Positions 1-59,735 of a DNA stretch of 64,000 nucleotides are shown piece after piece; the first letter of the stretch is position 1, and every line of letters starts with the position of its first letter. The stretch lies in the IMG/VR virus record IMGVR_UViG_3300024259_002152, positions 286,867 to 350,866 of that record; one strand, written 5' to 3'. The notes beneath the pieces are model-generated. The model saw only the letters and a program-made list of their open reading frames with translations. It did no database searches and was not told the DNA's origin. The position numbers and the translations under genes were made by a program.

Positions 1-2
1 AG

Positions 3-626
3 TGTAATTATGAGCAAATTAAGTGGGAAGCGTCATATATGGGAACTCGGTATGTGAAGCAATATAACTTTGAAGATATGGAAACCATAGTCAATACTGC
101 TAAAACTTTAGATAGCAATAATGAGGGTTATGTCATACGCTTCAAAAGCGGAATACGTTTAAAAATTAAAGGCGATGAGTATGTCCGCGTGCATAGACTA
201 ATTTCTCAAGTCACACCTCTTGCTATATGGGAATCTATGGTTAATGGTGACGACTTAGAAGGGATAAAAAAAGATTTGCCAGAAGAGATGGAAAAAGACT
301 TTGATACTATAAGAGCAATTTTTAATGCAAAATTAGAAGCTTTTATAAAAGAGGTAGAAAGTCTTTGTGAGCGAACTAAATCTATGTCAGATAAGGAATT
401 AGGCATATATATGCAACAGGGTCTTGTGGCATTCGGAAACACAGTTTTTAAAGATTCTTTTAAATTTATTTTCCATATGAGAAAGAATAAATTCTATGAA
501 TCTCTTAACGATGTGCCATCGTATGGTCGTAGAAGAATTTTTGCTGCATTTAGACCAAAAGCTAATATATTGGAAGGATATAAGCCTTCGTCAGTAGTTA
601 ATAGATTCGCCAATATGGACAACTAA
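3..626 (+). CDS. RNA ligase, T4 Rnl1-like (5' truncated by window edge)
   Basis: Frame open from base 3; ligase motifs EGYVIRF and RLKIKGDEYVRVHR. Confidence 0.8.
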   Translation, partial: CNYEQIKWEASYMGTRYVKQYNFEDMETIVNTAKTLDSNNEGYVIRFKSGIRLKIKGDEYVRVHRLISQVTPLAIWESMVNGDDLEGIKKDLPEEMEKDFDTIRAIFNAKLEAFIKEVESLCERTKSMSDKELGIYMQQGLVAFGNTVFKDSFKFIFHMRKNKFYESLNDVPSYGRRRIFAAFRPKANILEGYKPSSVVNRFANMDN

Positions 627-1192: not shown

Positions 1193-1981
1193 ATGATAGG
1201 TTCCATAATAGGCGATGTAATTGGTTCTCCTTATGAGGGGAGAAGGATGAATTTCTTTGATTATGATTTCCCTCTCTTTAATGAAAGATCTACATTTACA
1301 GATGATACTATACTAACTGTTGCTACAGCTAAAGCTATACTTGAAGATATTCCTTACAAAGATGTTTATCTTGAGTTTGGTAGAAAGTATAAACGTAAGG
1401 GTTATGGTGGAGCTTTTGAAGCATGGTTATGTTCTGATGATCCTCAACCTTATGATAGTTGGGGAAATGGTTCTGCTATGAGGGTGGGCCCTATAGGTTT
1501 TTATTTTGACGAAGATGATGAAATCTTAAAAGAAGCAAAAGCAAGTTCAGAAGTAACTCATAATCATCCACATGGAATAGACGGTGCTCAAGCAATAGCT
1601 TTAGCTATTCATCATGCTAAAATAGGAGACAGCAAAGAACAGATAAAAAAAATTGTTTTTGCTGTGACTGGTTATTATGATTTGAATAAAACTGTAGATG
1701 ATTATAGAAAGAATTATAAGTTTGATACTAGTTGTAAAGTAACTGTTCCCCAAGCATTAACTGCCTTCTTTGAATCTGATAGTTTTGAAGATTGTATTAG
1801 AAAGGCAGTTTTAATGGGGGGAGATACAGATACGCTGGCGTGTATAGCAGGGTCAGTAGCAGAAGCATATTATAAGATTATTCCTAATAATATTAGCATG
1901 AAAGCTTTAGAAAAACTACCTGTAGAATTTTCAATTATAATAAATCGTTTTTATAGGGAAGTTTTAGAAGGAAATATATGA
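1193..1981 (+). CDS. ADP-ribosylglycohydrolase (DraG/ARH family)
   Basis: GDVIGSPYE, FTDDT, SWGNGSAMR, THNH, GGDTDT motifs. Confidence 0.93.
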   Translation: MIGSIIGDVIGSPYEGRRMNFFDYDFPLFNERSTFTDDTILTVATAKAILEDIPYKDVYLEFGRKYKRKGYGGAFEAWLCSDDPQPYDSWGNGSAMRVGPIGFYFDEDDEILKEAKASSEVTHNHPHGIDGAQAIALAIHHAKIGDSKEQIKKIVFAVTGYYDLNKTVDDYRKNYKFDTSCKVTVPQALTAFFESDSFEDCIRKAVLMGGDTDTLACIAGSVAEAYYKIIPNNISMKALEKLPVEFSIIINRFYREVLEGNI

Positions 1982-2754: not shown

Positions 2755-5535
2755 ATGAGAATAGCTGATATATACCAGACTGTAGCTGATAATATAAATA
2801 GCGCTCAGGATAGAGGTGGGGATATAGTGTCTTATGTTGATCAGATGATGACAGACATTAATGATTCTGAGATACCTACTAATGACACAAACAAGAAAAC
2901 ACTAGAAAGTCAAATTAATGCGACTTCCCACCTTCTCATTTTAAAGAATAATACCTATACTGTTGAAGTGCTAAATTTTGTCCGAGAGTTACAAAAATAT
3001 GTAACGGAAGAGTATGGTTCAATAAATACTTTTTTAAGAGATCATGGCATACTAGTGGGAGTTACTTTTGCTGATATATCTAAAACTGTAGGATATCCAA
3101 TCGATGCAGATAATATCGTTGTAGATTATGGGTGCGATTTTTATGTGTCTAATAGTGGTAATGATTCAAATGATGGACGCACTGCGGCAACCGCATGGGC
3201 TACTCTTGATAAAGTTAGTAGCGTTCTTACTGATGCTACATTGAGTGTGGATAATGCAATTAGTGCTGGTGATATTGTTGGTTTTCGTACAGATGATATT
3301 TTTGTTGGAACATTAGATACTTCTGAAGTTGACGGTAGTTCTGGAAATCCTATTACTTTTACTTCATATGGGACGGGAAATAAACCAGTAATTACTGGTA
3401 AGATTACTTTAGGAGATAATTGGGTTCATCATTCTGGTAATATTTGGAGATATGATGTTTCATCTTTGTCTGCCACTCATGTTAGATATTTATTGTTGGA
3501 TGGTGTCGATCAAACAATGTCTCAATCAGAAGTGGGATATGCAGACAATGCGACATATAGTTCTTTCCAAGACTATAATTTAAGCTTTAATCCAAGCTTT
3601 AATCCTAGTGTAGATCCCGATTATAATCCTAGCGATTATGACAGTATTTATGTGGGTGCTGAAGTATTGATGAGAACAACAATTTTTACATGGGATATAC
3701 GAACTGTTACAGATTATGATCCTTATTCGGGGACAATATGTTTTGCACCAACTGTAAGTTATATTCTGGGAACAACAGGATCTTCTAAGGGGGGTTATTT
3801 CTTTCAGAATTCTTTATATATTTTGGAACAAAATGAGATTCAGGGGGAATGGGTAAATGAAGGTGATTATATTTATTATTATTCAATAACTGATCCTTAT
3901 GATTTAGGAACCATTGAAGTAAGTTCAGTAGATACTTTAATGGAAATTGAAAATTCAGAATATATAACTGTTAATAATCTAAAGTTTATGTATGCTAATG
4001 ATTATGCCATATTAGGGGATGGAGCCAATTATAAAAATATAAATAATTGTCATTTTGAGCAATGTAACACTGGTATTTTTGAGGCAATCACAGGTTCATC
4101 AAATTCAATAATAGATAATAATATTTTTACAGATATGGGTAGCATTGCTATTCATCAACGTGATTCAGTTGATGTGACAATTACAAATAATACTATTACT
4201 AATATCGGTTTGACAATTGGCAGGATGGCTTATGTAGAAGATTCTAATACTTGGAATCCTAATATGTGGTATTCGGGTATACATTGTATAGATGCGTCAG
4301 GAGGATTGATTAAATATAATAATATTACAAATGTTGGTTATATAGGATTTAATTTCACCAGACCTACCGATCAAGTGCTTATACAATATAACTATATGAA
4401 AAATCCTTGTTTTTTACTCGTCGATGGTGGATCATTTTATTCTTATAGTAATGCTCAACCTACTGTAACTTCAAATATTAATCAAATAACCTATAGAAAT
4501 AATATTGCCGAGTATGATGATTATGATAATGTAGATCGTTTGATTGGACTTGAAGGTTCTACTTATGAGGAAAGTTCTGCCGGAGTTGTTGGTCTATTTA
4601 AAGATGGATATCTAAGAGCTGCTAATTATTATGATAATTTTGCATTTGGTTTTTTCTTTGCTATTAGAAGCAATGCTTCGATGTATTCTGTGTGGTCAGG
4701 AAATATTGGAGTAGATAAATATTACATTTCTGGAACTGCTAGATCTTTTTATATGGCTGATGCGGCTTCAGTATTTTGGGTTAATAATATTTGTGAAAAT
4801 AATGTTTTTGTTTCTAATTATGTAGGTAGTTCTAGAGTGGGTTTGGTATATGATGATCAATTAATTGCTGCTAGTGGCAATTCATTTGATTATAATAAGA
4901 TGTTAAATCCATTTACTATACTTCCAGAACGTATTTCTACTTTGCCAAGCTTCAACTATTTAACAATAGAAGAATGGAAAGCATATGATGCAGTAGGACC
5001 TCATGAAACTTCTAATGTATTTTTGTATTCTATATCTGGACTATCTTCTGAGTCCGAATTTATCTGGTATGCTACTAATCCTACAAAATCAACAGTTAGT
5101 GTCAGTTTCCCTGCTGGCTATCGTTACTATACTGTTGATGGAGACGCAGTTACAAGTGATACCCTATCTTTATATGAAGGTAAGGTTTATTACAGGACTA
5201 TAGATGAAGGAATGCCTCAGGCTAGTAGTGTTACTATAAGTGAAAATATAAGCGCTAATCCTTCTAGCGGTGGAGTTTATGATGCTTCTTATGATTATAA
5301 CCATGCCGAAGGGAATACTGAATCAGGTTCTACTTATCAGTGGTATCGTTCAATAGATGGGACTGTTGAAGCGAGAGTAACAATTTCAGGTGCGAATAGC
5401 TTATCATATGACACAACTAGTATGGATATCGATCAATATGTCTTATTTGGTGTGACACCAAAATCTGCTGCTGGAGCGGGAAGTTTAGTTACCGGAGTGG
5501 AAAGATTTAGCAATACCATGTCTGTAGTTTGGTAA
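2755..5535 (+). CDS. parallel beta-helix (pectin lyase-like) protein with C-terminal Ig-like domain; possible virion appendage
   Basis: YVSNSGNDSNDGRT-AWATL start, Asn/Ile beta-helix repeats, YQWYR Ig-like end. Confidence 0.75.
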   Translation: MRIADIYQTVADNINSAQDRGGDIVSYVDQMMTDINDSEIPTNDTNKKTLESQINATSHLLILKNNTYTVEVLNFVRELQKYVTEEYGSINTFLRDHGILVGVTFADISKTVGYPIDADNIVVDYGCDFYVSNSGNDSNDGRTAATAWATLDKVSSVLTDATLSVDNAISAGDIVGFRTDDIFVGTLDTSEVDGSSGNPITFTSYGTGNKPVITGKITLGDNWVHHSGNIWRYDVSSLSATHVRYLLLDGVDQTMSQSEVGYADNATYSSFQDYNLSFNPSFNPSVDPDYNPSDYDSIYVGAEVLMRTTIFTWDIRTVTDYDPYSGTICFAPTVSYILGTTGSSKGGYFFQNSLYILEQNEIQGEWVNEGDYIYYYSITDPYDLGTIEVSSVDTLMEIENSEYITVNNLKFMYANDYAILGDGANYKNINNCHFEQCNTGIFEAITGSSNSIIDNNIFTDMGSIAIHQRDSVDVTITNNTITNIGLTIGRMAYVEDSNTWNPNMWYSGIHCIDASGGLIKYNNITNVGYIGFNFTRPTDQVLIQYNYMKNPCFLLVDGGSFYSYSNAQPTVTSNINQITYRNNIAEYDDYDNVDRLIGLEGSTYEESSAGVVGLFKDGYLRAANYYDNFAFGFFFAIRSNASMYSVWSGNIGVDKYYISGTARSFYMADAASVFWVNNICENNVFVSNYVGSSRVGLVYDDQLIAASGNSFDYNKMLNPFTILPERISTLPSFNYLTIEEWKAYDAVGPHETSNVFLYSISGLSSESEFIWYATNPTKSTVSVSFPAGYRYYTVDGDAVTSDTLSLYEGKVYYRTIDEGMPQASSVTISENISANPSSGGVYDASYDYNHAEGNTESGSTYQWYRSIDGTVEARVTISGANSLSYDTTSMDIDQYVLFGVTPKSAAGAGSLVTGVERFSNTMSVVW

Positions 5536-27239: not shown

Positions 27240-27471
27240 AAACTGTTTAGATTGTAGTTGTCATGAAATTATTGATGATCGAGATCCTCATGACTCGTTT
27301 TGTAGTGATGATATAGCAGTAGTATGCACAATAACCCAAAATCCTAACTGCAAACCAAAATCTAAATATCTAGCAAGTAGAAGTAAATTTCATATAGTAG
27401 CTTGTGCTTGTAGACCTTATAATGCGAAAAAAGAAGCAACAGTGCCCGATTGGTGCCCAAAAAACAAATAA
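27211..27471 (+). CDS. Cys-rich hypothetical protein
   Basis: CxxC...VPDWCP. Confidence 0.65.
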   Translation: MTTKKKKKIKNCLDCSCHEIIDDRDPHDSFCSDDIAVVCTITQNPNCKPKSKYLASRSKFHIVACACRPYNAKKEATVPDWCPKNK

Positions 27472-27481
27472 GGAATTGTCC

Positions 27482-28417
27482 ATGGCAAATGTAGTAATGA
27501 TTGTAGGATATCCCGCAGCAGGAAAATCAGCGATAGCACAAGGATATATAGACCATGGATATACCATTCTAAATAGAGATACAGAGGGAGGAACTATCTC
27601 TGCCCTTGTGCCTAAGATGGTAAAACTTATTAGACAATATACAGACGTTGTCCTAGATAATACTTTCCCTACCAAACAAGTTAGAAAACAATTCATAGAA
27701 GCATGTAAAGATAATAATACTCCTATCTATTGTAATTGGGTTAATTCTTCTATAGAAGAAGCTCAGTTTAATGCCTGTCAAAGAATGATAAAGACAAGGG
27801 GCAAACTTCTCTCTTCAGAAGAGATTAAAAAAGAAAAAAGTCCTAATATGTTCCCTCCTATGGTCCAATTCAAATACCGTAAAGAGTTTGAAGAACCATC
27901 AGAAAAGGAGGGTTTTGGTATGGTGACTATAACAGAATTTGAAAGAAGATTTCCCCCTAATTGGAAGAATAAAGCCCTATTCCTTGACTATGATGGAACA
28001 CTTAGAACTACAAAAAGCGATAAGAAATGGCCTACCAAACCCAATGACATTCAAATACTTCCTAATCGAAGAGCCGTCCTTGATTACTATAAATCTCAAG
28101 GATATATTCTGTTGGGAGTTAGTAATCAATCGGGAATAAGAAAAGATAATCCAACCGAAGAACAAGCAATAGTTTGCTTCGATAAAACTAATACTATGCT
28201 TGGACATAAGATAGATTATAAGTATTGCCCCCATAGACCAGCTCCCATTAGCTGCTATTGTAGAAAACCTATGCCAGGAATGGCAATAGAATTTTTCCAT
28301 AAATATAAACTAGATCCTACTCAGTGCATTATGGTGGGAGATATGACCTCTGATGAAACGTTTGCTAAGAGATCCCATATGCAGTTTGTTCATGCTGATG
28401 AATTTTTTAAGTCATAG
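27482..28417 (+). CDS. polynucleotide kinase / HAD 3'-phosphatase (PNKP-like)
   Basis: GYPAAGKS P-loop, LDNT; DYDGT, SNQSG, RKPMPGM, MVGD. Confidence 0.88.
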   Translation: MANVVMIVGYPAAGKSAIAQGYIDHGYTILNRDTEGGTISALVPKMVKLIRQYTDVVLDNTFPTKQVRKQFIEACKDNNTPIYCNWVNSSIEEAQFNACQRMIKTRGKLLSSEEIKKEKSPNMFPPMVQFKYRKEFEEPSEKEGFGMVTITEFERRFPPNWKNKALFLDYDGTLRTTKSDKKWPTKPNDIQILPNRRAVLDYYKSQGYILLGVSNQSGIRKDNPTEEQAIVCFDKTNTMLGHKIDYKYCPHRPAPISCYCRKPMPGMAIEFFHKYKLDPTQCIMVGDMTSDETFAKRSHMQFVHADEFFKS

Positions 28418-41533: not shown

Positions 41534-42070
41534 ATGCCTTCTAAAGATAGAGAAAAAGTAAAAGAGAGTAGAAAAAACAATTATGAAAAATATAAAGATT
41601 ATTATTTAGAAAAAAGTAAATATCAAAAAGCAAAAAATAATATTTTTTATTTCGAATATAAGAAAAAATTAAAATGTTCTAAGTGTCCTGAAAATCATAT
41701 ATCTTGTTTAGAATTCCACCACTTAGATCCCAATGAAAAAGAATATACCATTTCTAATTTAAGAACAAAATCTTTGAAAAAAGCTATGAAAGAAATGAAA
41801 AAATGTATTATTCTATGTTCAAATTGTCATAAAAAGGAACATTGGAATGATAATAAAATAGATGAAATGAAACAAAATATTGTTTTATTTGAAGAGAAAA
41901 AAAAGATATCGAAAGAACAAAATAATATTTGTAGAGGTTGTGGCAAGGATAGAGATGAAACTTTATTTGTAAAAAAAAGATGTTTTTGTGAGCAATGTTA
42001 TAGAGATTATCAGAAGGAGAAGATGAGAGAAAGAAGAGAAAAACAATTTAAGCAGGTTGATTGTGAGTAA
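41534..42070 (+). CDS. HNH endonuclease
   Basis: CSKC...LEFHHLDP...LCSNCH. Confidence 0.88.
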   Translation: MPSKDREKVKESRKNNYEKYKDYYLEKSKYQKAKNNIFYFEYKKKLKCSKCPENHISCLEFHHLDPNEKEYTISNLRTKSLKKAMKEMKKCIILCSNCHKKEHWNDNKIDEMKQNIVLFEEKKKISKEQNNICRGCGKDRDETLFVKKRCFCEQCYRDYQKEKMRERREKQFKQVDCE

Positions 42071-42183
42071 GTTATCGATTTTAGGAATCCGAGAATGTAG
42101 GTTCGAGTCCTACTCCCCTGATAACCAGGGGATAGCTTAATTGGCAGAGCGCGAAAAACGCTTATTCCTCCACCATATCTGCT
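42051..42183 (+). ncRNA. Y RNA (YrlA)-like RNA 1 with permuted tRNA module
   Basis: Bulged terminal stem, GTTATCG, T arm - closed acceptor - D arm. Confidence 0.75.
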
Positions 42184-42188
42184 TTTTT

Positions 42189-42262
42189 ACCCGTGTAGTT
42201 TAGTTGGCTAAAGCGTCTGTCCTACAAACAGAAGATCGTTGGTTCGAGTCCAACCTCGGGTA
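42189..42262 (+). tRNA. tRNA-Val(TAC)
   Basis: Cloverleaf, loop CCTACAA. Confidence 0.9.
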
Positions 42263-42263
42263 T

Positions 42264-42337
42264 TCATTAGTAGTTTAACGGGCAAAACACTCCAGCGCTT
42301 ATTGGTAGAGATGATGGTTCGAGTCCATCCTATTGAG
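42264..42337 (+). ncRNA. tRNA-like RNA with irregular anticodon arm
   Basis: Acceptor, D and T arms intact; no 5-bp/7-nt anticodon arm. Confidence 0.65.
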
Positions 42338-42339
42338 TT

Positions 42340-42458
42340 ACACAGGTTGATTGTAGAAGGTTATCGGTCAAAACATTTTTTAAACAAGAATGCACAGTAG
42401 GGTTCAAGTCCTTACACCCCAGTAATGGGTCTTATCTTTTACCACCACATATCTGTGT
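42340..42458 (+). ncRNA. Y RNA-like RNA 2 (T arm plus short hairpin)
   Basis: Same terminal stems and GTTATCG; GTAGGGTTCAAGTCCTTAC. Confidence 0.7.
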
Positions 42459-42461
42459 TTT

Positions 42462-42532
42462 CCCTCGTTGGTGTAATGGAAGCATAGGACATTGTCGATG
42501 TTCAGGCAGCGGATCGTTACCGCTACGAGGGG
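42462..42532 (+). tRNA. tRNA-Asp(GTC)
   Basis: Cloverleaf, loop TTGTCGA, atypical T loop. Confidence 0.82.
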
Positions 42533-42537
42533 TTTAA

Positions 42538-42621
42538 GGGAGTCCGCCAAAGCGGGAGAGTTGGGACAGGTTGTAACCCTGTTGTCGAAAGACTGAGTAG
42601 GTTCGAATCCTATGACTCCCA
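42538..42621 (+). tRNA. tRNA-Tyr(GTA)
   Basis: Loop TTGTAAC, long variable arm. Confidence 0.88.
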
Positions 42622-42624
42622 TTT

Positions 42625-42711
42625 GGAAGAGTTGGCAGAGTTGGCATGCCGAGCTGATTGCTAATCAGTCCTGCCTTCGGGGCAGTGCAGGATCGTCCCC
42701 TGTCTCTTCCG
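42625..42711 (+). tRNA. tRNA-Ser(GCT)
   Basis: Loop TTGCTAA, long variable arm, atypical T loop. Confidence 0.82.
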
Positions 42712-42717
42712 TTCATT

Positions 42718-42812
42718 GGATAGCGTGGTAACTATTGGTAGGTTACACTAGTCTTGAAAACTAGGTTCCCTTTCACAAAAGGGGAATAAGAGTTCGATTC
42801 TCTTCCTATCCG
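42718..42812 (+). tRNA. tRNA-Ser(TGA)
   Basis: Loop CTTGAAA, long variable arm. Confidence 0.88.
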
Positions 42813-42814
42813 TT

Positions 42815-42945
42815 AAGAGATCATATGGTGGAATTGGTATACACCTCTCCTATGCAGGGGAGCTTGATTGCGTTCAAGCGGTTTGATTCCGAAAATAGGT
42901 TGGATTCCTATATTAATACTGGTTCGAGTCCAGTTGTGATCTCTT
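42815..42945 (+). ncRNA. tRNA-like RNA with four hairpins between D and T arms
   Basis: 11-bp terminal stem, Leu-type D arm, canonical T arm. Confidence 0.7.
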
Positions 42946-42950
42946 ATTAC

Positions 42951-43023
42951 GGCGGTATAGTATAGTTGGTTAAAACATTCCTTTCATACGGGAAAGTCCC
43001 TGGTTCGATCCCAGGTATCGCTA
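42951..43023 (+). tRNA. tRNA-Met(CAT) (elongator or Ile2)
   Basis: Loop TTCATAC. Confidence 0.88.
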
Positions 43024-43054
43024 TTGTTAAAAACAAGTATGTAGCACCGAATAA

Positions 43055-43125
43055 GGCCCATTAGTTTAGTGGTAGAACGGTAGGTTTTCAGCCTATTAGC
43101 AGGGGTTCGACTCCCCTATGGGTCA
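43055..43125 (+). tRNA. tRNA-Glu(TTC)
   Basis: Loop TTTTCAG. Confidence 0.9.
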
Positions 43126-43131
43126 GTTTTT

Positions 43132-43203
43132 GCTCCTATCGTCTAGTGGTTAGGACATCTGGTTCTCAGCCAGAAAACGTGAGTTCGATCCTCATTAGGA
43201 GTA
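43132..43203 (+). tRNA. tRNA-Glu(CTC)
   Basis: Loop TTCTCAG. Confidence 0.92.
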
Positions 43204-43400
43204 TTTTCCCAAGTTTTTTCTCTGGTTTGACCACTCTAACTTTTTACTACTAAAAGGATTAGAGCGGCGAGTAAAAAACCTCATAAAAACTAATAAAAAA
43301 GCAGGAAAAAACTATTGGAAAGTGAAAGAAAAGACGATAGATTATTACTATAGTAACATTGGTTATGATAGTCTTTTACAAGTAAATAGAGAGAGAATTT

Positions 43401-43468
43401 ATACGGGTTGAAGTTTTAAAGTTATCGTTAAGGTCAACAAAATGCTTTTTAACATCCCACATCCGTAT
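43401..43468 (+). ncRNA. Y RNA-like RNA 3 (minimal, stem only)
   Basis: ATACGGGTTG/CACATCCGTAT plus GTTATCG. Confidence 0.65.
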
Positions 43469-43482
43469 TTTTAGAACAAGCA

Positions 43483-43720
43483 TGTGGGTTGATTGATGTC
43501 GGTTATCGATTATTCTATTTTTAATGCGTGTAAGAATCGAAAAAGCGAATCAGGTAACAGTCAAGTTGAGATAACGCCAATCGATATATTTGACGGGAAG
43601 ACTGGCTAGTTTTGAGAGAACCAGGTTGAAATATACTAATGGCTATGCACTTGAAATTTCCTAAGACAATGATTTTTAGCTCAATAACAGAGCGTTTCCG
43701 ATTTCTTCCACACATCCACA
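43483..43720 (+). ncRNA. Y RNA-like RNA 4 (long insert, D-arm remnant)
   Basis: TGTGGGTTG/CACATCCACA plus GTTATCG; TAGCTCAATAACAGAGC near 3' end. Confidence 0.65.
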
Positions 43721-43730
43721 GGCGTTTTTT

Positions 43731-43805
43731 TGTCGGGTAGTTTAAGCATAAAATGGCCACCGTAAGGTGGTTGATGGTAGGTGAGATGCCTGCCCCCTGA
43801 CACCA
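43731..43805 (+). ncRNA. tRNA-like RNA, anticodon loop replaced by GNRA tetraloop, ends CCA
   Basis: GGCCACC-GTAA-GGTGGTT arm. Confidence 0.7.
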
Positions 43806-43906
43806 TATTGGGTAGTTTAAATGTAAAATGCCTGACAAGGACCATAGGTAACCATTCCGTGGTCAAGTTCAGGAGATGATAGGATCAATGCCTATCCCCG
43901 ATGCCA
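43806..43906 (+). ncRNA. tRNA-like RNA with extended anticodon arm, ends CCA
   Basis: CCTGA...TCAGG encloses GACCAT/GTGGTC helix. Confidence 0.7.
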
Positions 43907-44013
43907 TTGGGTAGCTTATAGGTAAAGCAGTTGTTGAGTTATATCTCGATTTATAGTGTTGAGATAATATGACTTAATAACAGAAAAGGCGGTTCGATTC
44001 CCCTTCCCGATAT
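43905..44013 (+). ncRNA. tRNA-like RNA with about 20-bp anticodon arm
   Basis: GTTGTTGAGTTATA/TATGACTTAATAAC plus TCTCGA/TTGAGA. Confidence 0.7.
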
Positions 44014-44102
44014 TGCGGGGTTGAGTAGTCCGGCTTAACTCACGGGTCTCATAAGCCCGTAGATCCTTCAAGATCTCGGAGGTTCAAATCCTCCCCCCGC
44101 TA
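44014..44102 (+). tRNA. tRNA-Met(CAT), initiator-like, long variable arm
   Basis: T1:T72 mismatch, loop CTCATAA, T loop TTCAAAT. Confidence 0.85.
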
Positions 44103-44159
44103 TTACGAGTATTTTTATACTCATAAACAATGATGCGGCAACGGTTGCCGTGAAGGGAT

Positions 44160-44378
44160 GTGTGTGTTATGGTAAGGTGTTTTACAAAGACCGTTTCAAC
44201 GTACGGAAAACAAATTGGACATGGTGCCGATGGAGAGCCTATCGTTGAGCCCAAACTTCGACTAACAGCCGAAGAGTTTGATGTATCTACGGAAGATATG
44301 TATAAGCTAGAGGGTGCAACTAAGGCAATTTTTGATGAGCGTCTAGCTGATCAGATGAAGAAAGAAATAGATGACTAA
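44160..44378 (+). CDS. hypothetical protein
   Basis: ORF in gap between tRNAs; start uncertain. Confidence 0.5.
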   Translation: MCVMVRCFTKTVSTYGKQIGHGADGEPIVEPKLRLTAEEFDVSTEDMYKLEGATKAIFDERLADQMKKEIDD

Positions 44379-44518
44379 TCTATTTTTATGATGTAGCAAT
44401 TTTTTAGTATTGAAAAAGGTAGTTGTTCGGTATTTTGTGGTGAGTATACACAGATTCTTCAACCATAATTAATCTTAATCTTAGGATATCGACTGGCCAA
44501 CTATCTTTTTCTTTTTTA

Positions 44519-44593
44519 CAGGCCGTAGCTCAGCTTGGTCAGAGCGCCGCATTTGGGATGCGGAAGTCGGACGTTCAAATCGTCTCGGCCTGA
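44519..44593 (+). tRNA. tRNA-Pro(TGG)
   Basis: Loop TTTGGGA. Confidence 0.93.
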
Positions 44594-44629
44594 GTTTTTC
44601 ATTACATAGCACCGAATAGGAGATCTCAT

Positions 44630-44827
44630 ATGATGCCTACTGGTCGCGTTAAATGGTTCAATAAGAAGAAGGGTTATGGTTTTGTAGACCATGAAGGTAA
44701 TGATATCTTTATTCATCATTCTGAGATAGAAGGCACAAATCTTCTTGAAGATAATGATCTTATCACTTTCGATATTGTCGATGGTGAAAAAGGTCTTAAG
44801 GCAAAAAAAATAACTAAAATGGGTTGA
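44630..44827 (+). CDS. csp: cold-shock domain protein
   Basis: [13 protein letters not shown] (RNP1), DIFIHHS (RNP2). Confidence 0.93.
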
Positions 44828-44944
44828 TTTAGAGTAGGTTATCGAATTTAACGAAAGGATATGGGTTCGAGTCCCATTGCTCACCTCGGTGAGTATAGCT
44901 CAATTGGCAGAGTTTACATTGTTTATTCTTACTAACACATCCAT
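44819..44944 (+). ncRNA. Y RNA (YrlA)-like RNA 5 with permuted tRNA module
   Basis: T arm ATGGGTTCGAGTCCCAT, TGCTCAC/GTGAGTA, D arm TAGCTCAATTGGCAGAG. Confidence 0.75.
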
Positions 44945-44958
44945 AAGTTATTTTTTAT

Positions 44959-45031
44959 GGGGGCTTAGCTCAGTCGGGAGAGCGATTGCTTTGCAAGCAA
45001 TAGGTCGCAGGTTCGATTCCTGTAGCCTCCA
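44959..45031 (+). tRNA. tRNA-Ala(TGC)
   Basis: Loop TTTGCAA, G3:U70. Confidence 0.93.
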
Positions 45032-45048
45032 CTTTTCATTTCCAGTAT

Positions 45049-45121
45049 GGGCCATTGGTGAAACTGGGATCACACTTGGTTTGCACCCAGGAATTACGGG
45101 TTCGAGTCCCGTATGTGTCCA
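45049..45121 (+). tRNA. tRNA-Ala(TGC), bulged acceptor stem
   Basis: Loop TTTGCAC, G3:U pair. Confidence 0.8.
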
Positions 45122-45127
45122 TTTCTT

Positions 45128-45198
45128 GGGCCTATAGTTCAATGGTAGAACGCACTCCTTATAAGGGTGTCACGCAAGTTCAATTCTTGCTAGGCCTA
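45128..45198 (+). tRNA. tRNA-Ile(TAT)
   Basis: Loop CTTATAA. Confidence 0.88.
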
Positions 45199-45202
45199 CT
45201 TA

Positions 45203-45309
45203 GACAGGTTGAATGTGAAAAAGTTATCGTAAGTTCGAATCTTATCTCCCCCTCATTTATGGGGGAGTTGCTCAATGGGAGCGTCTTTTTTTACTATCCC
45301 ACATCTGTC
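45203..45309 (+). ncRNA. Y RNA (YrlA)-like RNA 6 with permuted tRNA module
   Basis: GACAGGTTGAATG...CACATCTGTC; T arm, CTCCCCC/GGGGGAG, D arm. Confidence 0.78.
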
Positions 45310-58403: not shown

Positions 58404-59735
58404 ATGTCAGCGATAACAGAACATAAGAAATGTATTTGTGTAGAATTTGGAGATACTAACAACAACAAGGTATGGCAATATACTTTGTATGATGATGACA
58501 CTGCCTTAACAGAGTGGGGGAGAGTTGGGAAAGGTCTACAAAGTAAGATAACAAGTCATTCTCAGGCTCTTAAAAAGTGGAGAGAAAAAACCAATTCCAA
58601 TAACAAACCCGACAAAATGTATACTGAAGTAAAAGCAGTTGATACGGGGGGTTCTGTTTCTGTCGGCTCTGTTAAAAATGCAGAATTGAAAGATGTTGCT
58701 AAGAAACAGATTAAATCTAAAAATCCTGTTATTGCACAACTTATTGATTTTCTTGTTCAAGTCAATGCCCATCAGATTTTGAAACAATCGGGTGGCAAGA
58801 TCATGTATGATGCAAACTCCGCACAATTCAAAACACCACTCGGAGTTATTGACCCAGTGCAAGTAGCAGAAGCTAGAGATTTGCTTGTTATGATTTCTGA
58901 TTTTGTAAAGGCTGAGGACTTTGATAATAAAGAATTTGGTAGGATTCTTAATTCCTATCTTAGACTTATTCCTCATGATGTAGGAATGTCTAAGATTTCT
59001 ACTGGACGAATATTTCCTAATACTCAAACAGTTATTGCAGAGAATGATTTGCTTGATGGTTTGGAAACTTCCTTTATTGATATTACGACAAAGCCGACAA
59101 AGAAGAAAACCAAAAAGAAAGATGCTCCACAAATTTTTAATGTTGAAATGGAGATTGTAAGTGATAAGCAAATCTTGTCTCATGTCAAGCACCTTTATCA
59201 ATCGACAAGAAAGAGTATGCACCAATCTAACAATCTTTCTGTTCAAACAGTTTATGCTGTAACGATCAAGAACATGAAAGATGGATATGATAAGCATGGT
59301 GCTAAGATGAGTAACATTTGGCAGTTGTGGCACGGAACAAAGGCAAGTAATCTTTTGTCTATTATGAGGCAAGGTTTGATTATTCCTTCTTCCAGTTCTG
59401 GTCATGTGACAGGTCGAATGTATTCCGATGGGGTGTATTTTTCTGACATTAGTACTAAAGCACTGAATTATGCTACGAACTACTGGGGAGGTGGAGGCAA
59501 TACTGATAAAACGTTTATGTTTTTGGCGGACGTAGCGATGGGTAATTACCATATCGCCAAAAGTAGTTGGACTAAATATCCTATTCCTGGTTCGGATAGT
59601 ACATGGGCGAAAGGCAGAGATAAAGGGGGAGTTAATTCTGGAGTGGTCAACGATGAAATGATAGTATATCGTCTTGATCAGTGTAATCTTGTTTATTTGG
59701 TAGAATTTGTGCCAAATTCTCAGCTTAGAACATAA
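58404..59735 (+). CDS. WGR-domain poly(ADP-ribose) polymerase (PARP)-like protein
   Basis: NNNK...EWGRVG; YLRLIPH regulatory domain; LWHGT, GRMYSDGVYFS, KALNY, DEMIVY. Confidence 0.9.
   Translation: MSAITEHKKCICVEFGDTNNNKVWQYTLYDDDTALTEWGRVGKGLQSKITSHSQALKKWREKTNSNNKPDKMYTEVKAVDTGGSVSVGSVKNAELKDVAKKQIKSKNPVIAQLIDFLVQVNAHQILKQSGGKIMYDANSAQFKTPLGVIDPVQVAEARDLLVMISDFVKAEDFDNKEFGRILNSYLRLIPHDVGMSKISTGRIFPNTQTVIAENDLLDGLETSFIDITTKPTKKKTKKKDAPQIFNVEMEIVSDKQILSHVKHLYQSTRKSMHQSNNLSVQTVYAVTIKNMKDGYDKHGAKMSNIWQLWHGTKASNLLSIMRQGLIIPSSSSGHVTGRMYSDGVYFSDISTKALNYATNYWGGGGNTDKTFMFLADVAMGNYHIAKSSWTKYPIPGSDSTWAKGRDKGGVNSGVVNDEMIVYRLDQCNLVYLVEFVPNSQLRT

What the first reader, a model, noticed from the sequence alone, without database searches (positions are those of the whole stretch)
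42051..45309. Six Y-RNA (YrlA)-like RNAs: one conserved bulged stem carrying interchangeable cargo, including circularly permuted tRNA modules
Seen: six elements (42051-42183, 42340-42458, 43401-43468, 43483-43720, 44819-44944, 45203-45309) share 5' GGTTGA, a second stem, then GTTATCG, and 3' CA(C/T)ATC. The outer helix covaries fully (GCAG/CTGC, ACACAG/CTGTGT, ATACGG/CCGTAT, TGTGG/CCACA, ATGG/CCAT, GACAG/CTGTC). All keep G:U, U:A, one bulged pyrimidine, U:A, G:C, and a T tract lies just downstream. The cargo differs. Copies 1, 5 and 6 hold T arm, then an acceptor stem closed by a loop, then D arm, with no anticodon arm. Copy 2 has only a T arm and a short hairpin, copy 3 is nearly empty, and copy 4 has about 170 nt plus a D-arm remnant. 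Copies 1 and 5 overlap the 3' ends of the HNH and csp genes. Known: bacterial YrlA Y RNAs bind Ro60/Rsr through a terminal stem with GNCGAAN(0-1)G and carry this permuted tRNA-like domain. The motif here is GTTGA(A/T)N(0-1)G-like, with C changed to U. Inference: a phage repertoire of Y RNAs that tether a Ro60-type protein to different partners, or act as tRNA-elbow decoys. No Ro60/TROVE gene is in this window. tRNA scanners would probably miss these elements.
Basis: partly seen in the sequence, partly recalled or inferred. Interest (0 to 1): 0.92.

Follow-up and report, generated by a model that had tools for sequence, protein, structure and literature searches.

The report
Six phage Y RNAs among tRNAs
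Six small structured RNAs packed between the tRNA genes of a 350-kb phage are Y RNAs, partner RNAs of the Ro60 protein that the same phage encodes 44 kb away; this is a variant of a known system, with a changed protein-binding motif and four kinds of cargo domain.

Summary
The pattern GGTTGA-N-GTTATCG occurs exactly six times in the window, all on the + strand inside the tRNA array (0.01 expected). Each copy is closed by a covarying helix and CA(C/T)ATC.

The Y-RNA reading is supported.
- The window is the last 64 kb of a 350,866-bp viral contig. That contig encodes a Ro60 ortholog (TROVE plus vWA_Ro60, 575 aa) 1.75 kb upstream of the window start, beside an Rnl1-type RNA ligase.
- A covariance model built only from the tRNA-array RNAs finds 92 matches in 80 unrelated Ro60-encoding viral loci. 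All are on the Ro60 strand and most lie within 1 kb upstream of Ro60. It finds none in 886 kb of control loci.
- Ro60-adjacent RNAs share the handle (terminal helix, GGNCGA, second stem, GGUUAUC box) and the same cargo classes.
- Two related huge phages carry orthologous RNAs and a Ro60 of the same clade.

Differences from known Y RNAs:
- The conserved bulged C is U in all 14 copies, with a matching 3'-strand change.
- The RNAs lie 44 kb from Ro60, interleaved with tRNAs.
- The Ro60 mRNA leader carries a hairpin that mimics the variant handle.

Verdict: a new variant of a known kind. Binding is not shown.

The parts
42050..42184 (+). Y RNA copy 1: handle plus permuted tRNA-like cargo (T arm, loop-closed acceptor stem, D arm). 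It ends 4 nt before tRNA-Val.
   Evidence: R1 score 121.8 bits. Rfam YrlA partial match, 27.5 bits. The ortholog L250:11860-12002 has fully compensated T and acceptor stems.
42340..42458 (+). Y RNA copy 2: handle plus T arm plus GNRA-capped hairpin. It sits 1-2 nt from the flanking tRNAs.
   Evidence: R1 score 34.8 bits, E 8.8e-5. The ortholog is L250:12190-12313. A Ro60-adjacent counterpart of the same type is L353:4587-4707.
43401..43468 (+). Y RNA copy 3: minimal form (handle, second stem, small loop), YrlB-like.
   Evidence: R1 score 33.4 bits. Orthologs are L251:418-494 and L245:2198-2266(-). It has the same size and layout as Ro60-adjacent L347:4920-4988 and seven others.
43483..43720 (+). 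Y RNA copy 4: handle plus a conserved structured cargo of about 190 nt and unknown type.
   Evidence: Handle pattern. The ortholog L251:507-761 shows 7 compensatory pairs. There is no Rfam match. R1 does not find it because the cargo is too large.
44819..44944 (+). Y RNA copy 5: handle plus tRNA-like cargo. It overlaps the stop codon of the cold-shock gene.
   Evidence: R1 score 101.9 bits. Rfam YrlA partial match, 25.7 bits. Orthologs are L251:1846-1972 and L245:696-825(-).
45203..45309 (+). Y RNA copy 6: handle plus compact tRNA-like cargo. It lies between tRNA-Ile and tRNA-Thr.
   Evidence: Rfam YrlA full-length match (positions 1-114), 34 bits. R1 score 96.4 bits. The ortholog is L251:2160-2268.
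1..626 (+). 3' part of an Rnl1-type RNA ligase gene. This is the downstream edge of the Ro60 gene cluster. Ro60 itself lies outside the window, 1,753-3,480 nt upstream of position 1 (contig 283,387-285,114).
   Evidence: L376:11073-12284 matches RNA_lig_T4_1. L376:8179-9906 matches vWA_Ro60 (211 bits) and TROVE (112 bits). Its belonging to one functional system with the RNAs is inferred.
27404..28417 (+). Polynucleotide kinase-phosphatase (Pnkp-like). This is RNA-repair context and possibly part of the same pathway.
   Evidence: Pfam PNK3P plus AAA_33. The functional link is inferred only.

Best explanation
The six elements are Y RNAs of the bacterial and phage YrlA/YrlB kind, and they serve the Ro60 protein encoded by the same phage.

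Proposed mechanism:
1. They are transcribed as part of the polycistronic tRNA array. Cleavage of the neighbouring tRNAs, which lie 1-14 nt away, releases them. This step is inferred from the spacing.
2. The 5' and 3' ends pair into a terminal helix followed by a conserved bulged helix, 5' GGUUGA against 3' CA(Y)AUC. This is the counterpart of the Ro60-binding helix of known Y RNAs. A second stem and a GUUAUC box follow. This handle docks on the outer face of the Ro60 ring. Docking is inferred by homology.
3. The variable cargo is presented to other factors, so one Ro60 can be directed to, or gated for, different partners. The cargo is a tRNA-like elbow in copies 1, 5 and 6, a T arm plus GNRA hairpin in copy 2, almost nothing in copy 3, and a 190-nt domain in copy 4. 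The known example of such a partner is PNPase. The adjacent Rnl1 ligase and the Pnkp suggest tRNA or RNA repair and quality control during infection. This last step is speculative.

In this phage clade the normally bulged C of the motif is U. It can pair with an A that replaces a U on the 3' strand, which moves the bulge to the 3' strand. The clade's Ro60 presumably co-adapted to this change.
For: - Ro60 ortholog on the same contig and strand.
- All three phages that carry the variant RNAs encode a Ro60 of one clade, 74-100% identical.
- Model R1, built from tRNA-array RNAs only, gives 92 hits at E<=1 (64 at E<0.01, best 81 bits) in 80 TROVE loci. All are on the TROVE strand and cluster within 1 kb upstream of TROVE. 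It gives 0 hits in 886 kb of control loci.
- The handle pattern GNCGA N8-12 GYTAYC occurs 115 times on the TROVE strand against 8 on the opposite strand.
- In the joint alignment of 48 RNAs, 93.4% of cells are paired against 39-46% when slid, and 32 of 34 pairs are compensated.
- Rfam YrlA aligns copy 6 over its full length.
- Every cargo class has a Ro60-adjacent counterpart elsewhere.
- The Ro60 leader hairpin reproduces the variant helix in 5 of 6 clade members, and its closing stem covaries.
- A phage Ro60 binding upstream Y-like RNAs has been shown experimentally, and C-to-U in CGAA weakened binding only about 3-fold (PMC12135203).
Against: - No expression, end-mapping or binding data exist. 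The sequence is a metagenomic contig with an unknown host.
- The literal GNCGAA motif is not met.
- The Rfam score is below the gathering threshold.
- The RNAs lie about 44 kb from Ro60, whereas published YrlAs lie within 4 kb (PMC4201824).
- Part of the R1 score comes from the tRNA-like domain, and tRNA dimers give weak hits of up to 29.5 bits.
- Alignment A8 is fitted to the model, which inflates the pairing counts.
- The leader hairpin is thermodynamically weak in the AU-rich members.
Confidence: 0.8

Rival explanations
1. The elements are tRNA-like decoys or sponges that act without Ro60. Their elbows or T arms would titrate host tRNA-directed nucleases, modification enzymes or defence sensors. 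The shared stem would be only a structural clamp and processing signal.
For: Three copies keep an intact T-loop/D-loop elbow. They sit in a tRNA array of a phage with Rnl1 and Pnkp repair genes. M. smegmatis YrlA is a substrate of RNase P and of CCA addition (PMC4201824).
Against: The handle is strictly conserved in copies 3 and 4, which have no tRNA-like part. The same handle is found next to Ro60 in dozens of unrelated contigs. The leader of Ro60 carries the same variant helix.
Confidence: 0.1
2. The variant handle (U for C) binds a protein other than Ro60, for example another product of the cluster such as the 531-aa AAA ATPase or the ankyrin-like protein. On this view the family descends from Y RNAs but has been repurposed.
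For: The otherwise invariant C is changed in 14 of 14 copies. The RNAs have moved away from Ro60. No canonical Y RNA is left next to this Ro60.
Against: If so, this Ro60 clade would have no Y RNA at all. The Ro60 leader mimic links the variant helix to the Ro60 gene. C-to-U cost only about 3-fold in affinity in phiLo. The KY..R segment of the Ro60 RNA-binding face is conserved; the residue assignment comes from my own memory.
Confidence: 0.07
3. The elements are decayed or permuted tRNA genes, or transcription or processing punctuation (terminator-like stems with U tracts), without a function of their own.
For: They are embedded among tRNAs. T tracts lie downstream. The T and D arms look tRNA-derived.
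Against: All six are conserved as orthologs in a phage whose Ro60 is only 84% identical. Their stems show compensatory changes and their 6- and 7-nt boxes are invariant. There is no anticodon arm. The simple terminator scan calls none of the closing helices.
Confidence: 0.03

Closest known systems
YrlA and YrlB Y RNAs of Salmonella, Mycobacterium smegmatis and mycobacteriophages (Chen et al. 2014, PMC4201824; Rfam RF02553)
   Same: Both have a terminal helix carrying a short conserved 5' motif. Both have a tRNA-like module in the order T arm, loop-closed acceptor stem, D arm. In both, a short partner RNA lacks that module. Both occur in genomes that encode Ro60, on the same strand.
   Different: The motif is GUUGA(A/U)NG rather than GNCGAAN0-1G. 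The RNAs lie about 44 kb from Ro60 rather than within 4 kb. There are six paralogs with four cargo classes. The Rfam score is 34 bits against a threshold of 69. A GUUAUC box after the second stem does not appear among the passages of that paper that I searched.
Thermus phage phiLo Ro60 with Yrl1 and Yrl2 (PMC12135203, 2025)
   Same: A phage-encoded Ro60 with phage-encoded Y-like RNAs of stem-bulge-stem form. The paper shows binding and a ternary complex with host PNPase.
   Different: There are two RNAs directly upstream of Ro60, both with the CGAA motif, and no tRNA-like cargo is reported. Here there are six RNAs inside a tRNA array, with UGAA.
Ro60-adjacent RNA arrays in IMG/VR viral contigs
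   Same: The handle is identical in layout: helix, GGNCGA, a 9-10 nt stem strand, then GGUUAUC, with UUAUC or UUGCC plus the helix on the 3' side. The cargo classes are the same. There are up to six copies per locus, often interleaved with tRNA genes.
   Different: Those RNAs have the bulged C and sit within about 1 kb of Ro60. In the joint alignment, the pair at handle position 4 exists only in the ten variant sequences (UA:10). It is unpaired or gapped in 32 of the other 38.
Metazoan Y RNAs (bulged helix GGUCCGA / UUGACC bound by Ro60; Stein et al. 2005, as cited)
   Same: A conserved bulged helix is formed by the RNA ends. The G:U and U:A pairs and the pyrimidine bulge are retained.
   Different: The bulge is predicted on the 3' strand rather than the 5' strand. 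The cargo is tRNA-derived. The RNAs are released from a tRNA precursor rather than made as Pol III transcripts.

Membership tests
Bacterial/phage Y RNA (YrlA type, Rfam RF02553) | Reaches the Rfam gathering score (69 bits) | tested here: not met
   Copy 6 scores 34 bits over the full length, E 2.4e-4. Copies 1 and 5 score 27.5 and 25.7 bits as partial matches. The same threshold detects no YrlA in 12 loci where such RNAs lie next to Ro60, so it is uninformative for phage members.
Bacterial/phage Y RNA (YrlA type) | 5' motif GNCGAAN0-1G | tested here: not met
   All 14 copies in three phages read G-U-U-G-A-(A/U)-N-G. The C is replaced by U.
Bacterial/phage Y RNA (YrlA type) | The 5' and 3' ends pair into a terminal helix that encloses the motif, with covariation | tested here: met
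   The variable pairs of the outer helix covary: 4 of 10 pairs are compensated within the 7-sequence set and 8 of 9 in the 48-sequence set.
Bacterial/phage Y RNA (YrlA type) | tRNA-like domain: T arm, acceptor stem closed by a loop, D arm | tested here: met
   Met for copies 1, 5 and 6. The T, acceptor and D helices are 92-96% paired with compensatory changes. The T loop GUUCGA and the D-loop GG are conserved. Copy 2 has only the T arm. Copies 3 and 4 lack the domain (YrlB-like and other).
Bacterial/phage Y RNA | A Ro60 (TROVE) ortholog is encoded in the same genome | tested here: met
   L376:8179-9906 on the same contig matches vWA_Ro60 (211 bits) and TROVE (112 bits). It scores 392 bits against Xenopus Ro60 1yvp.
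Bacterial/phage Y RNA | Encoded within about 4 kb of Ro60 on the same strand (criterion of Chen et al. 2014) | tested here: not met
   The strand is the same, but copies 1 to 6 lie 43.8 to 47 kb downstream of the Ro60 stop codon (coordinates).
Bacterial/phage Y RNA | Detectable homology to RNAs that lie next to Ro60 genes | tested here: met
   Model R1, built without any Ro60-adjacent sequence, gives 92 hits in 80 TROVE loci, all on the TROVE strand, and 0 hits in 886 kb of controls.
Bacterial/phage Y RNA | Physically bound by Ro60 | not testable with these tools
   This needs EMSA or co-immunoprecipitation.
tRNA (RF00005) or circularly permuted tRNA gene | Anticodon arm and a full cloverleaf that can be aminoacylated | tested here: not met
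   ARAGORN calls none of the six. The only Rfam tRNA match is 18.4 bits over copy 1. No anticodon arm is present, and the position is taken by the handle stems.
Two-piece (permuted) tmRNA | tRNA-like domain joined to a tag reading frame and pseudoknots | tested here: not met
   ARAGORN finds no tmRNA. The Rfam tmRNA match is 10.7 bits over the T loop only. The RNAs are 68-135 nt long with no room for a tag.

The most novel reading that the evidence does not exclude
This clade of huge phages runs a private Ro60 system. The recognition helix has been rewired (U:A in place of the bulged C, with the bulge moved to the 3' strand). This would let the phage Ro60 and its six Y RNAs work orthogonally to any host Ro60 and Y RNAs. 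Ro60 would control its own translation through a leader hairpin that mimics the handle. The four cargo classes would send one Ro60 ring to different clients: tRNA-handling enzymes or the Rnl1/Pnkp repair pair through the tRNA elbows, and something else through the 190-nt domain. Release from the tRNA precursor would couple Y RNA supply to tRNA production.
Probability: 0.25. Interest if true: 0.75.

Novelty: new variant of a known kind. Interest (0 to 1): 0.55.

Why it matters
Y RNAs are thought to work as adaptors that gate Ro60 and tether it to effectors, but few natural sets allow that idea to be tested. This phage offers six RNAs with one handle and four different cargo types, together with their cognate Ro60 and orthologs in related phages. 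It is a ready-made panel for asking what the cargo does.

The systematic C-to-U change in the otherwise invariant nucleotide, with a correlated 3'-strand change and a matching hairpin in the Ro60 leader, is a natural specificity variant for studying Ro60-RNA recognition.

The survey also indicates that arrays of up to six Y-like RNAs, often mixed with tRNA genes, are common next to phage Ro60 genes. The Rfam YrlA threshold misses them, so phage Y RNAs are probably under-annotated.

The practical consequence is modest. This extends a known system rather than founding a new one.

Tried and rejected
- Megablast of the region against GenBank phages found no match.
They were useful later only as control loci. 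As a control for the 5' pattern itself they are biased, because they were selected for it.
- The tighter three-box pattern gave 56 stretches. Most were two conserved coding families (111-nt and 107-nt groups), and I rejected those after reading them.
- The search for homologous proteins with the Bxz1 Ro protein returned only close actinobacterial relatives and did not help.
- The six-protein TROVE alignment was too diverse for the search for related loci.
- The four-protein alignment worked, but it was capped at 80 of at least 413 loci, and the source contig was not among them.
- A look-up of the truncated first ORF failed.
- MAFFT did not align the second stem of the minimal RNAs, so no model was built from the Ro60-adjacent set. 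I ran the reciprocal test instead.
- Rfam at the permissive threshold gave nothing for the cargo of copy 4.
- The Xenopus residue numbers K170 and R174 could not be verified in the paper library and are marked as memory.
- Permuted tRNA, tmRNA, terminator and ribozyme readings were considered and dropped (see the membership and rival sections).

Full report

The region lies in a 10-kb tRNA array of an AT-rich, phage-like sequence in which all genes are on the + strand. There are 31 ARAGORN calls between 41039 and 51150.

The two-box pattern GGTTGA N5-20 GTTATCG matches exactly six times, all on the + strand between 42055 and 45229. Shuffles give 0.01 expected. Allowing one mismatch per box adds nothing convincing.

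Each copy ends with CA(C/T)ATC followed by a 4-6 bp complement of the bases just upstream of GGTTGA, and that helix differs from copy to copy.

The cargo descriptions hold:
- Copies 1, 5 and 6 contain a T arm, an acceptor stem closed by a loop, and a D arm.
- Copy 2 has a T arm and a GNRA-capped hairpin.
- Copy 3 is 68 nt with almost no cargo.
- Copy 4 has about 190 nt of cargo.

Copies 1 and 5 overlap the last codons of ORF 41534-42070 and of a cold-shock gene at 44630-44827. The stop codon of the cold-shock gene is the TGA of the motif. Pfam does not confirm HNH for the first ORF.

The RNAs sit 1-14 nt from neighbouring tRNAs.

**2. Where does the window come from, and are there relatives?**

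The window is the last 64 kb (286,867-350,866) of IMG/VR contig 3300024259_002152, which is 350,866 bp long.

A three-box pattern scan of the viral collection returned true relatives only in two other huge-phage contigs. These are 3300035698_029839 (297,710 bp) and 3300033145_003233 (547,943 bp).

The first of these carries orthologs of all six elements in a syntenic tRNA array. The second carries at least two in the stretch fetched.

Across the 14 copies the boxes are invariant, while the outer helix, second stem, T stem and acceptor stem change in a compensatory way.

For the seven tRNA-like copies, a hand-specified five-helix structure is 91.8% paired, against 42-57% when the partners are slid. 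21 of 35 pairs show changes on both sides, and no shuffle out of 500 reaches the observed values.

The large cargo of copy 4 is conserved and has 7 compensated pairs against its ortholog.

**3. Is there a Ro60?**

There is none in the window. Pfam scans of all ORFs of 336 aa or more found no TROVE domain, and tblastn with mycobacteriophage Bxz1 Ro gave a best E-value of 1.2.

I built a TROVE alignment from annotated records and used it to fetch 80 Ro60 loci from the viral collection. One of them, L340, has homologs of the first two window ORFs 2.7 kb downstream of its Ro60.

An exact-protein look-up of window ORF 717-1148 then showed a 326,829-bp contig with the same gene order as the window. 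It has a 575-aa TROVE plus vWA_Ro60 gene three genes upstream.

Fetching the upstream part of the source contig itself (L376) confirmed this. Ro60 is at L376:8179-9906, which is contig 283,387-285,114, on the + strand. That is 1,753 nt before window position 1. It matches vWA_Ro60 at 211 bits and TROVE at 112 bits. It scores 392 bits against Xenopus Ro60 (1yvp), more than against Deinococcus Rsr at 286 bits.

It is flanked by an AAA ATPase, a TnpB-like gene, an ankyrin-like protein, and an Rnl1-type RNA ligase whose 3' end is window 1-626. A Pnkp-like gene lies at window 27404-28417.

No Y-like RNA lies beside this Ro60.

The two related huge phages encode Ro60s that are 84% and 74% identical. 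Three more contigs belong to the same Ro60 clade, and the next nearest Ro60 is 47% identical.

**4. Are the elements the same kind of RNA as Ro60-linked RNAs?**

Rfam YrlA aligns copy 6 over all 114 model positions, but at 34 bits against a gathering score of 69. Copies 1 and 5 match only in the tRNA-like part. That threshold also finds no YrlA in 12 viral loci where such RNAs lie next to Ro60, so failing it says little here.

Reading the 80 Ro60 loci showed the same handle on the Ro60 strand. It consists of a helix, GG(U/C)CGA, 9-10 nt of a second stem, and GGUUAUC. On the 3' side there is UUAUC or UUGCC plus the helix complement.

The pattern GNCGA N8-12 GYTAYC occurs 115 times on the Ro60 strand and 8 times on the other strand. 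It is present in 44 of the 80 loci, with up to six copies per locus, mostly in the kilobase upstream of Ro60.

All four cargo classes of the window have counterparts there:
- minimal, for example L347:4920-4988;
- T arm plus GNRA hairpin, L353:4587-4707;
- full tRNA-like, L360:4493-4630 and L312:4765-4899;
- large, L331:2643-2894.

tRNA genes are often interleaved with these RNAs.

As a formal test, I built a covariance model (R1) from the seven tRNA-array RNAs only. In the 80 Ro60 loci it found 92 matches at E<=1 and 64 at E<0.01, with a best score of 81 bits. Every match is on the Ro60 strand. It found none in 886 kb of unrelated viral loci.

In the window R1 scores copies 1, 5 and 6 at 96-122 bits and copies 2 and 3 at about 34 bits. 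tRNA dimers score at most 29.5 bits.

A joint alignment of 48 RNAs is 93.4% paired, against 39-46% when slid, and 32 of 34 pairs are compensated. The caveat is that this alignment is fitted to the model.

**5. What is different?**

In the canonical RNAs the conserved helix reads 5' G-G-N-[C]-G-A over 3' U-U-N'-Y-C, with the C unpaired. This is the same register as the metazoan GGUC[C]GA / UUGACC helix. That register is my own reading, combined with the description in PMC4201824.

In the tRNA-array family the C is U in 14 of 14 copies, and the 3' strand reads C-A-Y-A-U-C. The U can therefore pair with the new A, and the pyrimidine bulge moves to the 3' strand.

In the joint alignment this pair is U:A in exactly the ten variant sequences. 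It is unpaired or gapped in 32 of the other 38.

For Thermus phage phiLo, C-to-U in the CGAA motif raised the KD only from 16.6 to 49 nM (PMC12135203). The change is therefore compatible with Ro60 binding.

The other differences are the 44-kb distance from Ro60 (published YrlAs are nearly all within 4 kb) and the number and variety of paralogs.

**6. An independent link between the variant helix and Ro60**

The Ro60 leader contains an invariant island UUAAUUAGGUUGAUUU just before the Shine-Dalgarno sequence in three clade members that otherwise diverge.

With two more members the pattern becomes (U)AUAUC, stem, loop, stem, GGUUG(A/G). This is the two strands of the variant helix joined by a small hairpin. 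The closing stem covaries: UAA/UUA in four members and UGACC/GGUCA in L380. The minimum-energy fold shows the hairpin in all five.

The hairpin is weak in the AU-rich members (-2 to -4 kcal/mol). An operator for Ro60 autoregulation is therefore an inference, not a finding.

**7. Mechanism, with status of each step**

- Shown by sequence: the family, its structure, its conservation, its homology to Ro60-linked RNAs, and the presence of a cognate Ro60.
- Inferred from known biology (PMC4201824, PMC12135203, PMC7824862): the handle binds the outer surface of Ro60, and the cargo recruits or mimics other factors.
- Inferred from spacing: the RNAs are released by RNase P and by 3' processing of the flanking tRNAs.
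- Speculative: the tRNA-like cargo connects Ro60 to tRNA repair by the neighbouring Rnl1 and Pnkp, or to host PNPase.

**8. Verdict**

Phage Ro60-Y RNA systems are already known. This is a new variant of that kind, because it has a rewired recognition helix, is dispersed in the tRNA array, and has six paralogs with four cargo classes. It also carries a plausible autoregulatory leader mimic. Interest is moderate.

Noticed in passing
L376:8140-8165 (source contig, about 3.5 kb upstream of window position 1); also L379, L382, L380 and L340 just upstream of their Ro60 start codons: The Ro60 mRNA leader carries (U)AUAUC, stem, loop, stem, GGUUG(A/G) about 10 nt before the Shine-Dalgarno sequence. 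This is a hairpin version of the variant Y RNA handle. The closing stem covaries (UAA/UUA against UGACC/GGUCA). It may be an autoregulatory operator. The hairpin is weak in the AU-rich members.
   Followed up: partly
window 43731-43808, 43809-43907, 43907-44012 (+): Three tRNA-shaped RNAs that ARAGORN does not call. They share a 5' UGGGUAG(U/C)UUA, an acceptor-like stem and a T-arm-like hairpin. The first has a GNRA-capped hairpin where the anticodon arm should be and ends in ACCA. The second has a long hairpin and ends in GCCA. The third looks like a tRNA with an insert of about 45 nt in the anticodon loop (Rfam tRNA 22.7 bits). Fold z-scores are -3.5, -1.7 and -4.4.
   Followed up: partly
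80 Ro60 loci L293-L372, mostly positions 3600-5000: Arrays of Y-like RNAs lie upstream of phage Ro60 genes in at least 44 of 80 viral contigs, with up to six handle matches per locus, and are often mixed with tRNA genes. None reaches the Rfam YrlA gathering score in the 12 loci tested, so they are probably unannotated.
   Followed up: partly
window 42071-42077 and the same box in the other five copies; also Ro60-adjacent RNAs in other contigs: The GUUAUC box after the second stem is conserved across the whole phage family, even in minimal RNAs. It contains the same AUC that pairs with GGU in the 3' handle strand. An alternative pairing (a switch) or a second protein contact is possible. This remains unexplained.
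   Followed up: no
window 41343, 43042, 44607, 45502, 49045, 50754 (+): The 12-mer TAGCACCGAAT(A/C/T) occurs six times (0.15 expected). All copies are on the + strand and all lie inside the tRNA array, several just upstream of small genes or tRNAs. It is probably a phage promoter, leader or processing motif.
   Followed up: partly
window 42263-42338, 42538-42621, 42819-42942 (+): Odd tRNAs. ARAGORN reports one with a two-base 'anticodon' (tRNA-???). Rfam tRNA matches span 84 and 124 nt at two places that ARAGORN does not call, which suggests inserts or long extra arms.
   Followed up: no
window 1193-1981, 27404-28417, 58404-59735; L376:2926-3876 and 4720-5481: RNA-repair and NAD-related genes lie around Ro60: an ADP-ribosylglycohydrolase, a Pnkp-like kinase-phosphatase, a PARP-like protein with PARP catalytic and regulatory domains, a queuosine salvage protein and a TnpB-like gene.
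   Followed up: no
L376:8179-9906: The phage Ro60 is closer in sequence to vertebrate Ro60 (Xenopus 392 bits, human 374 bits) than to Deinococcus Rsr (286 bits). The KY..R segment is conserved. The position aligned with Xenopus H187 is R.
   Followed up: partly
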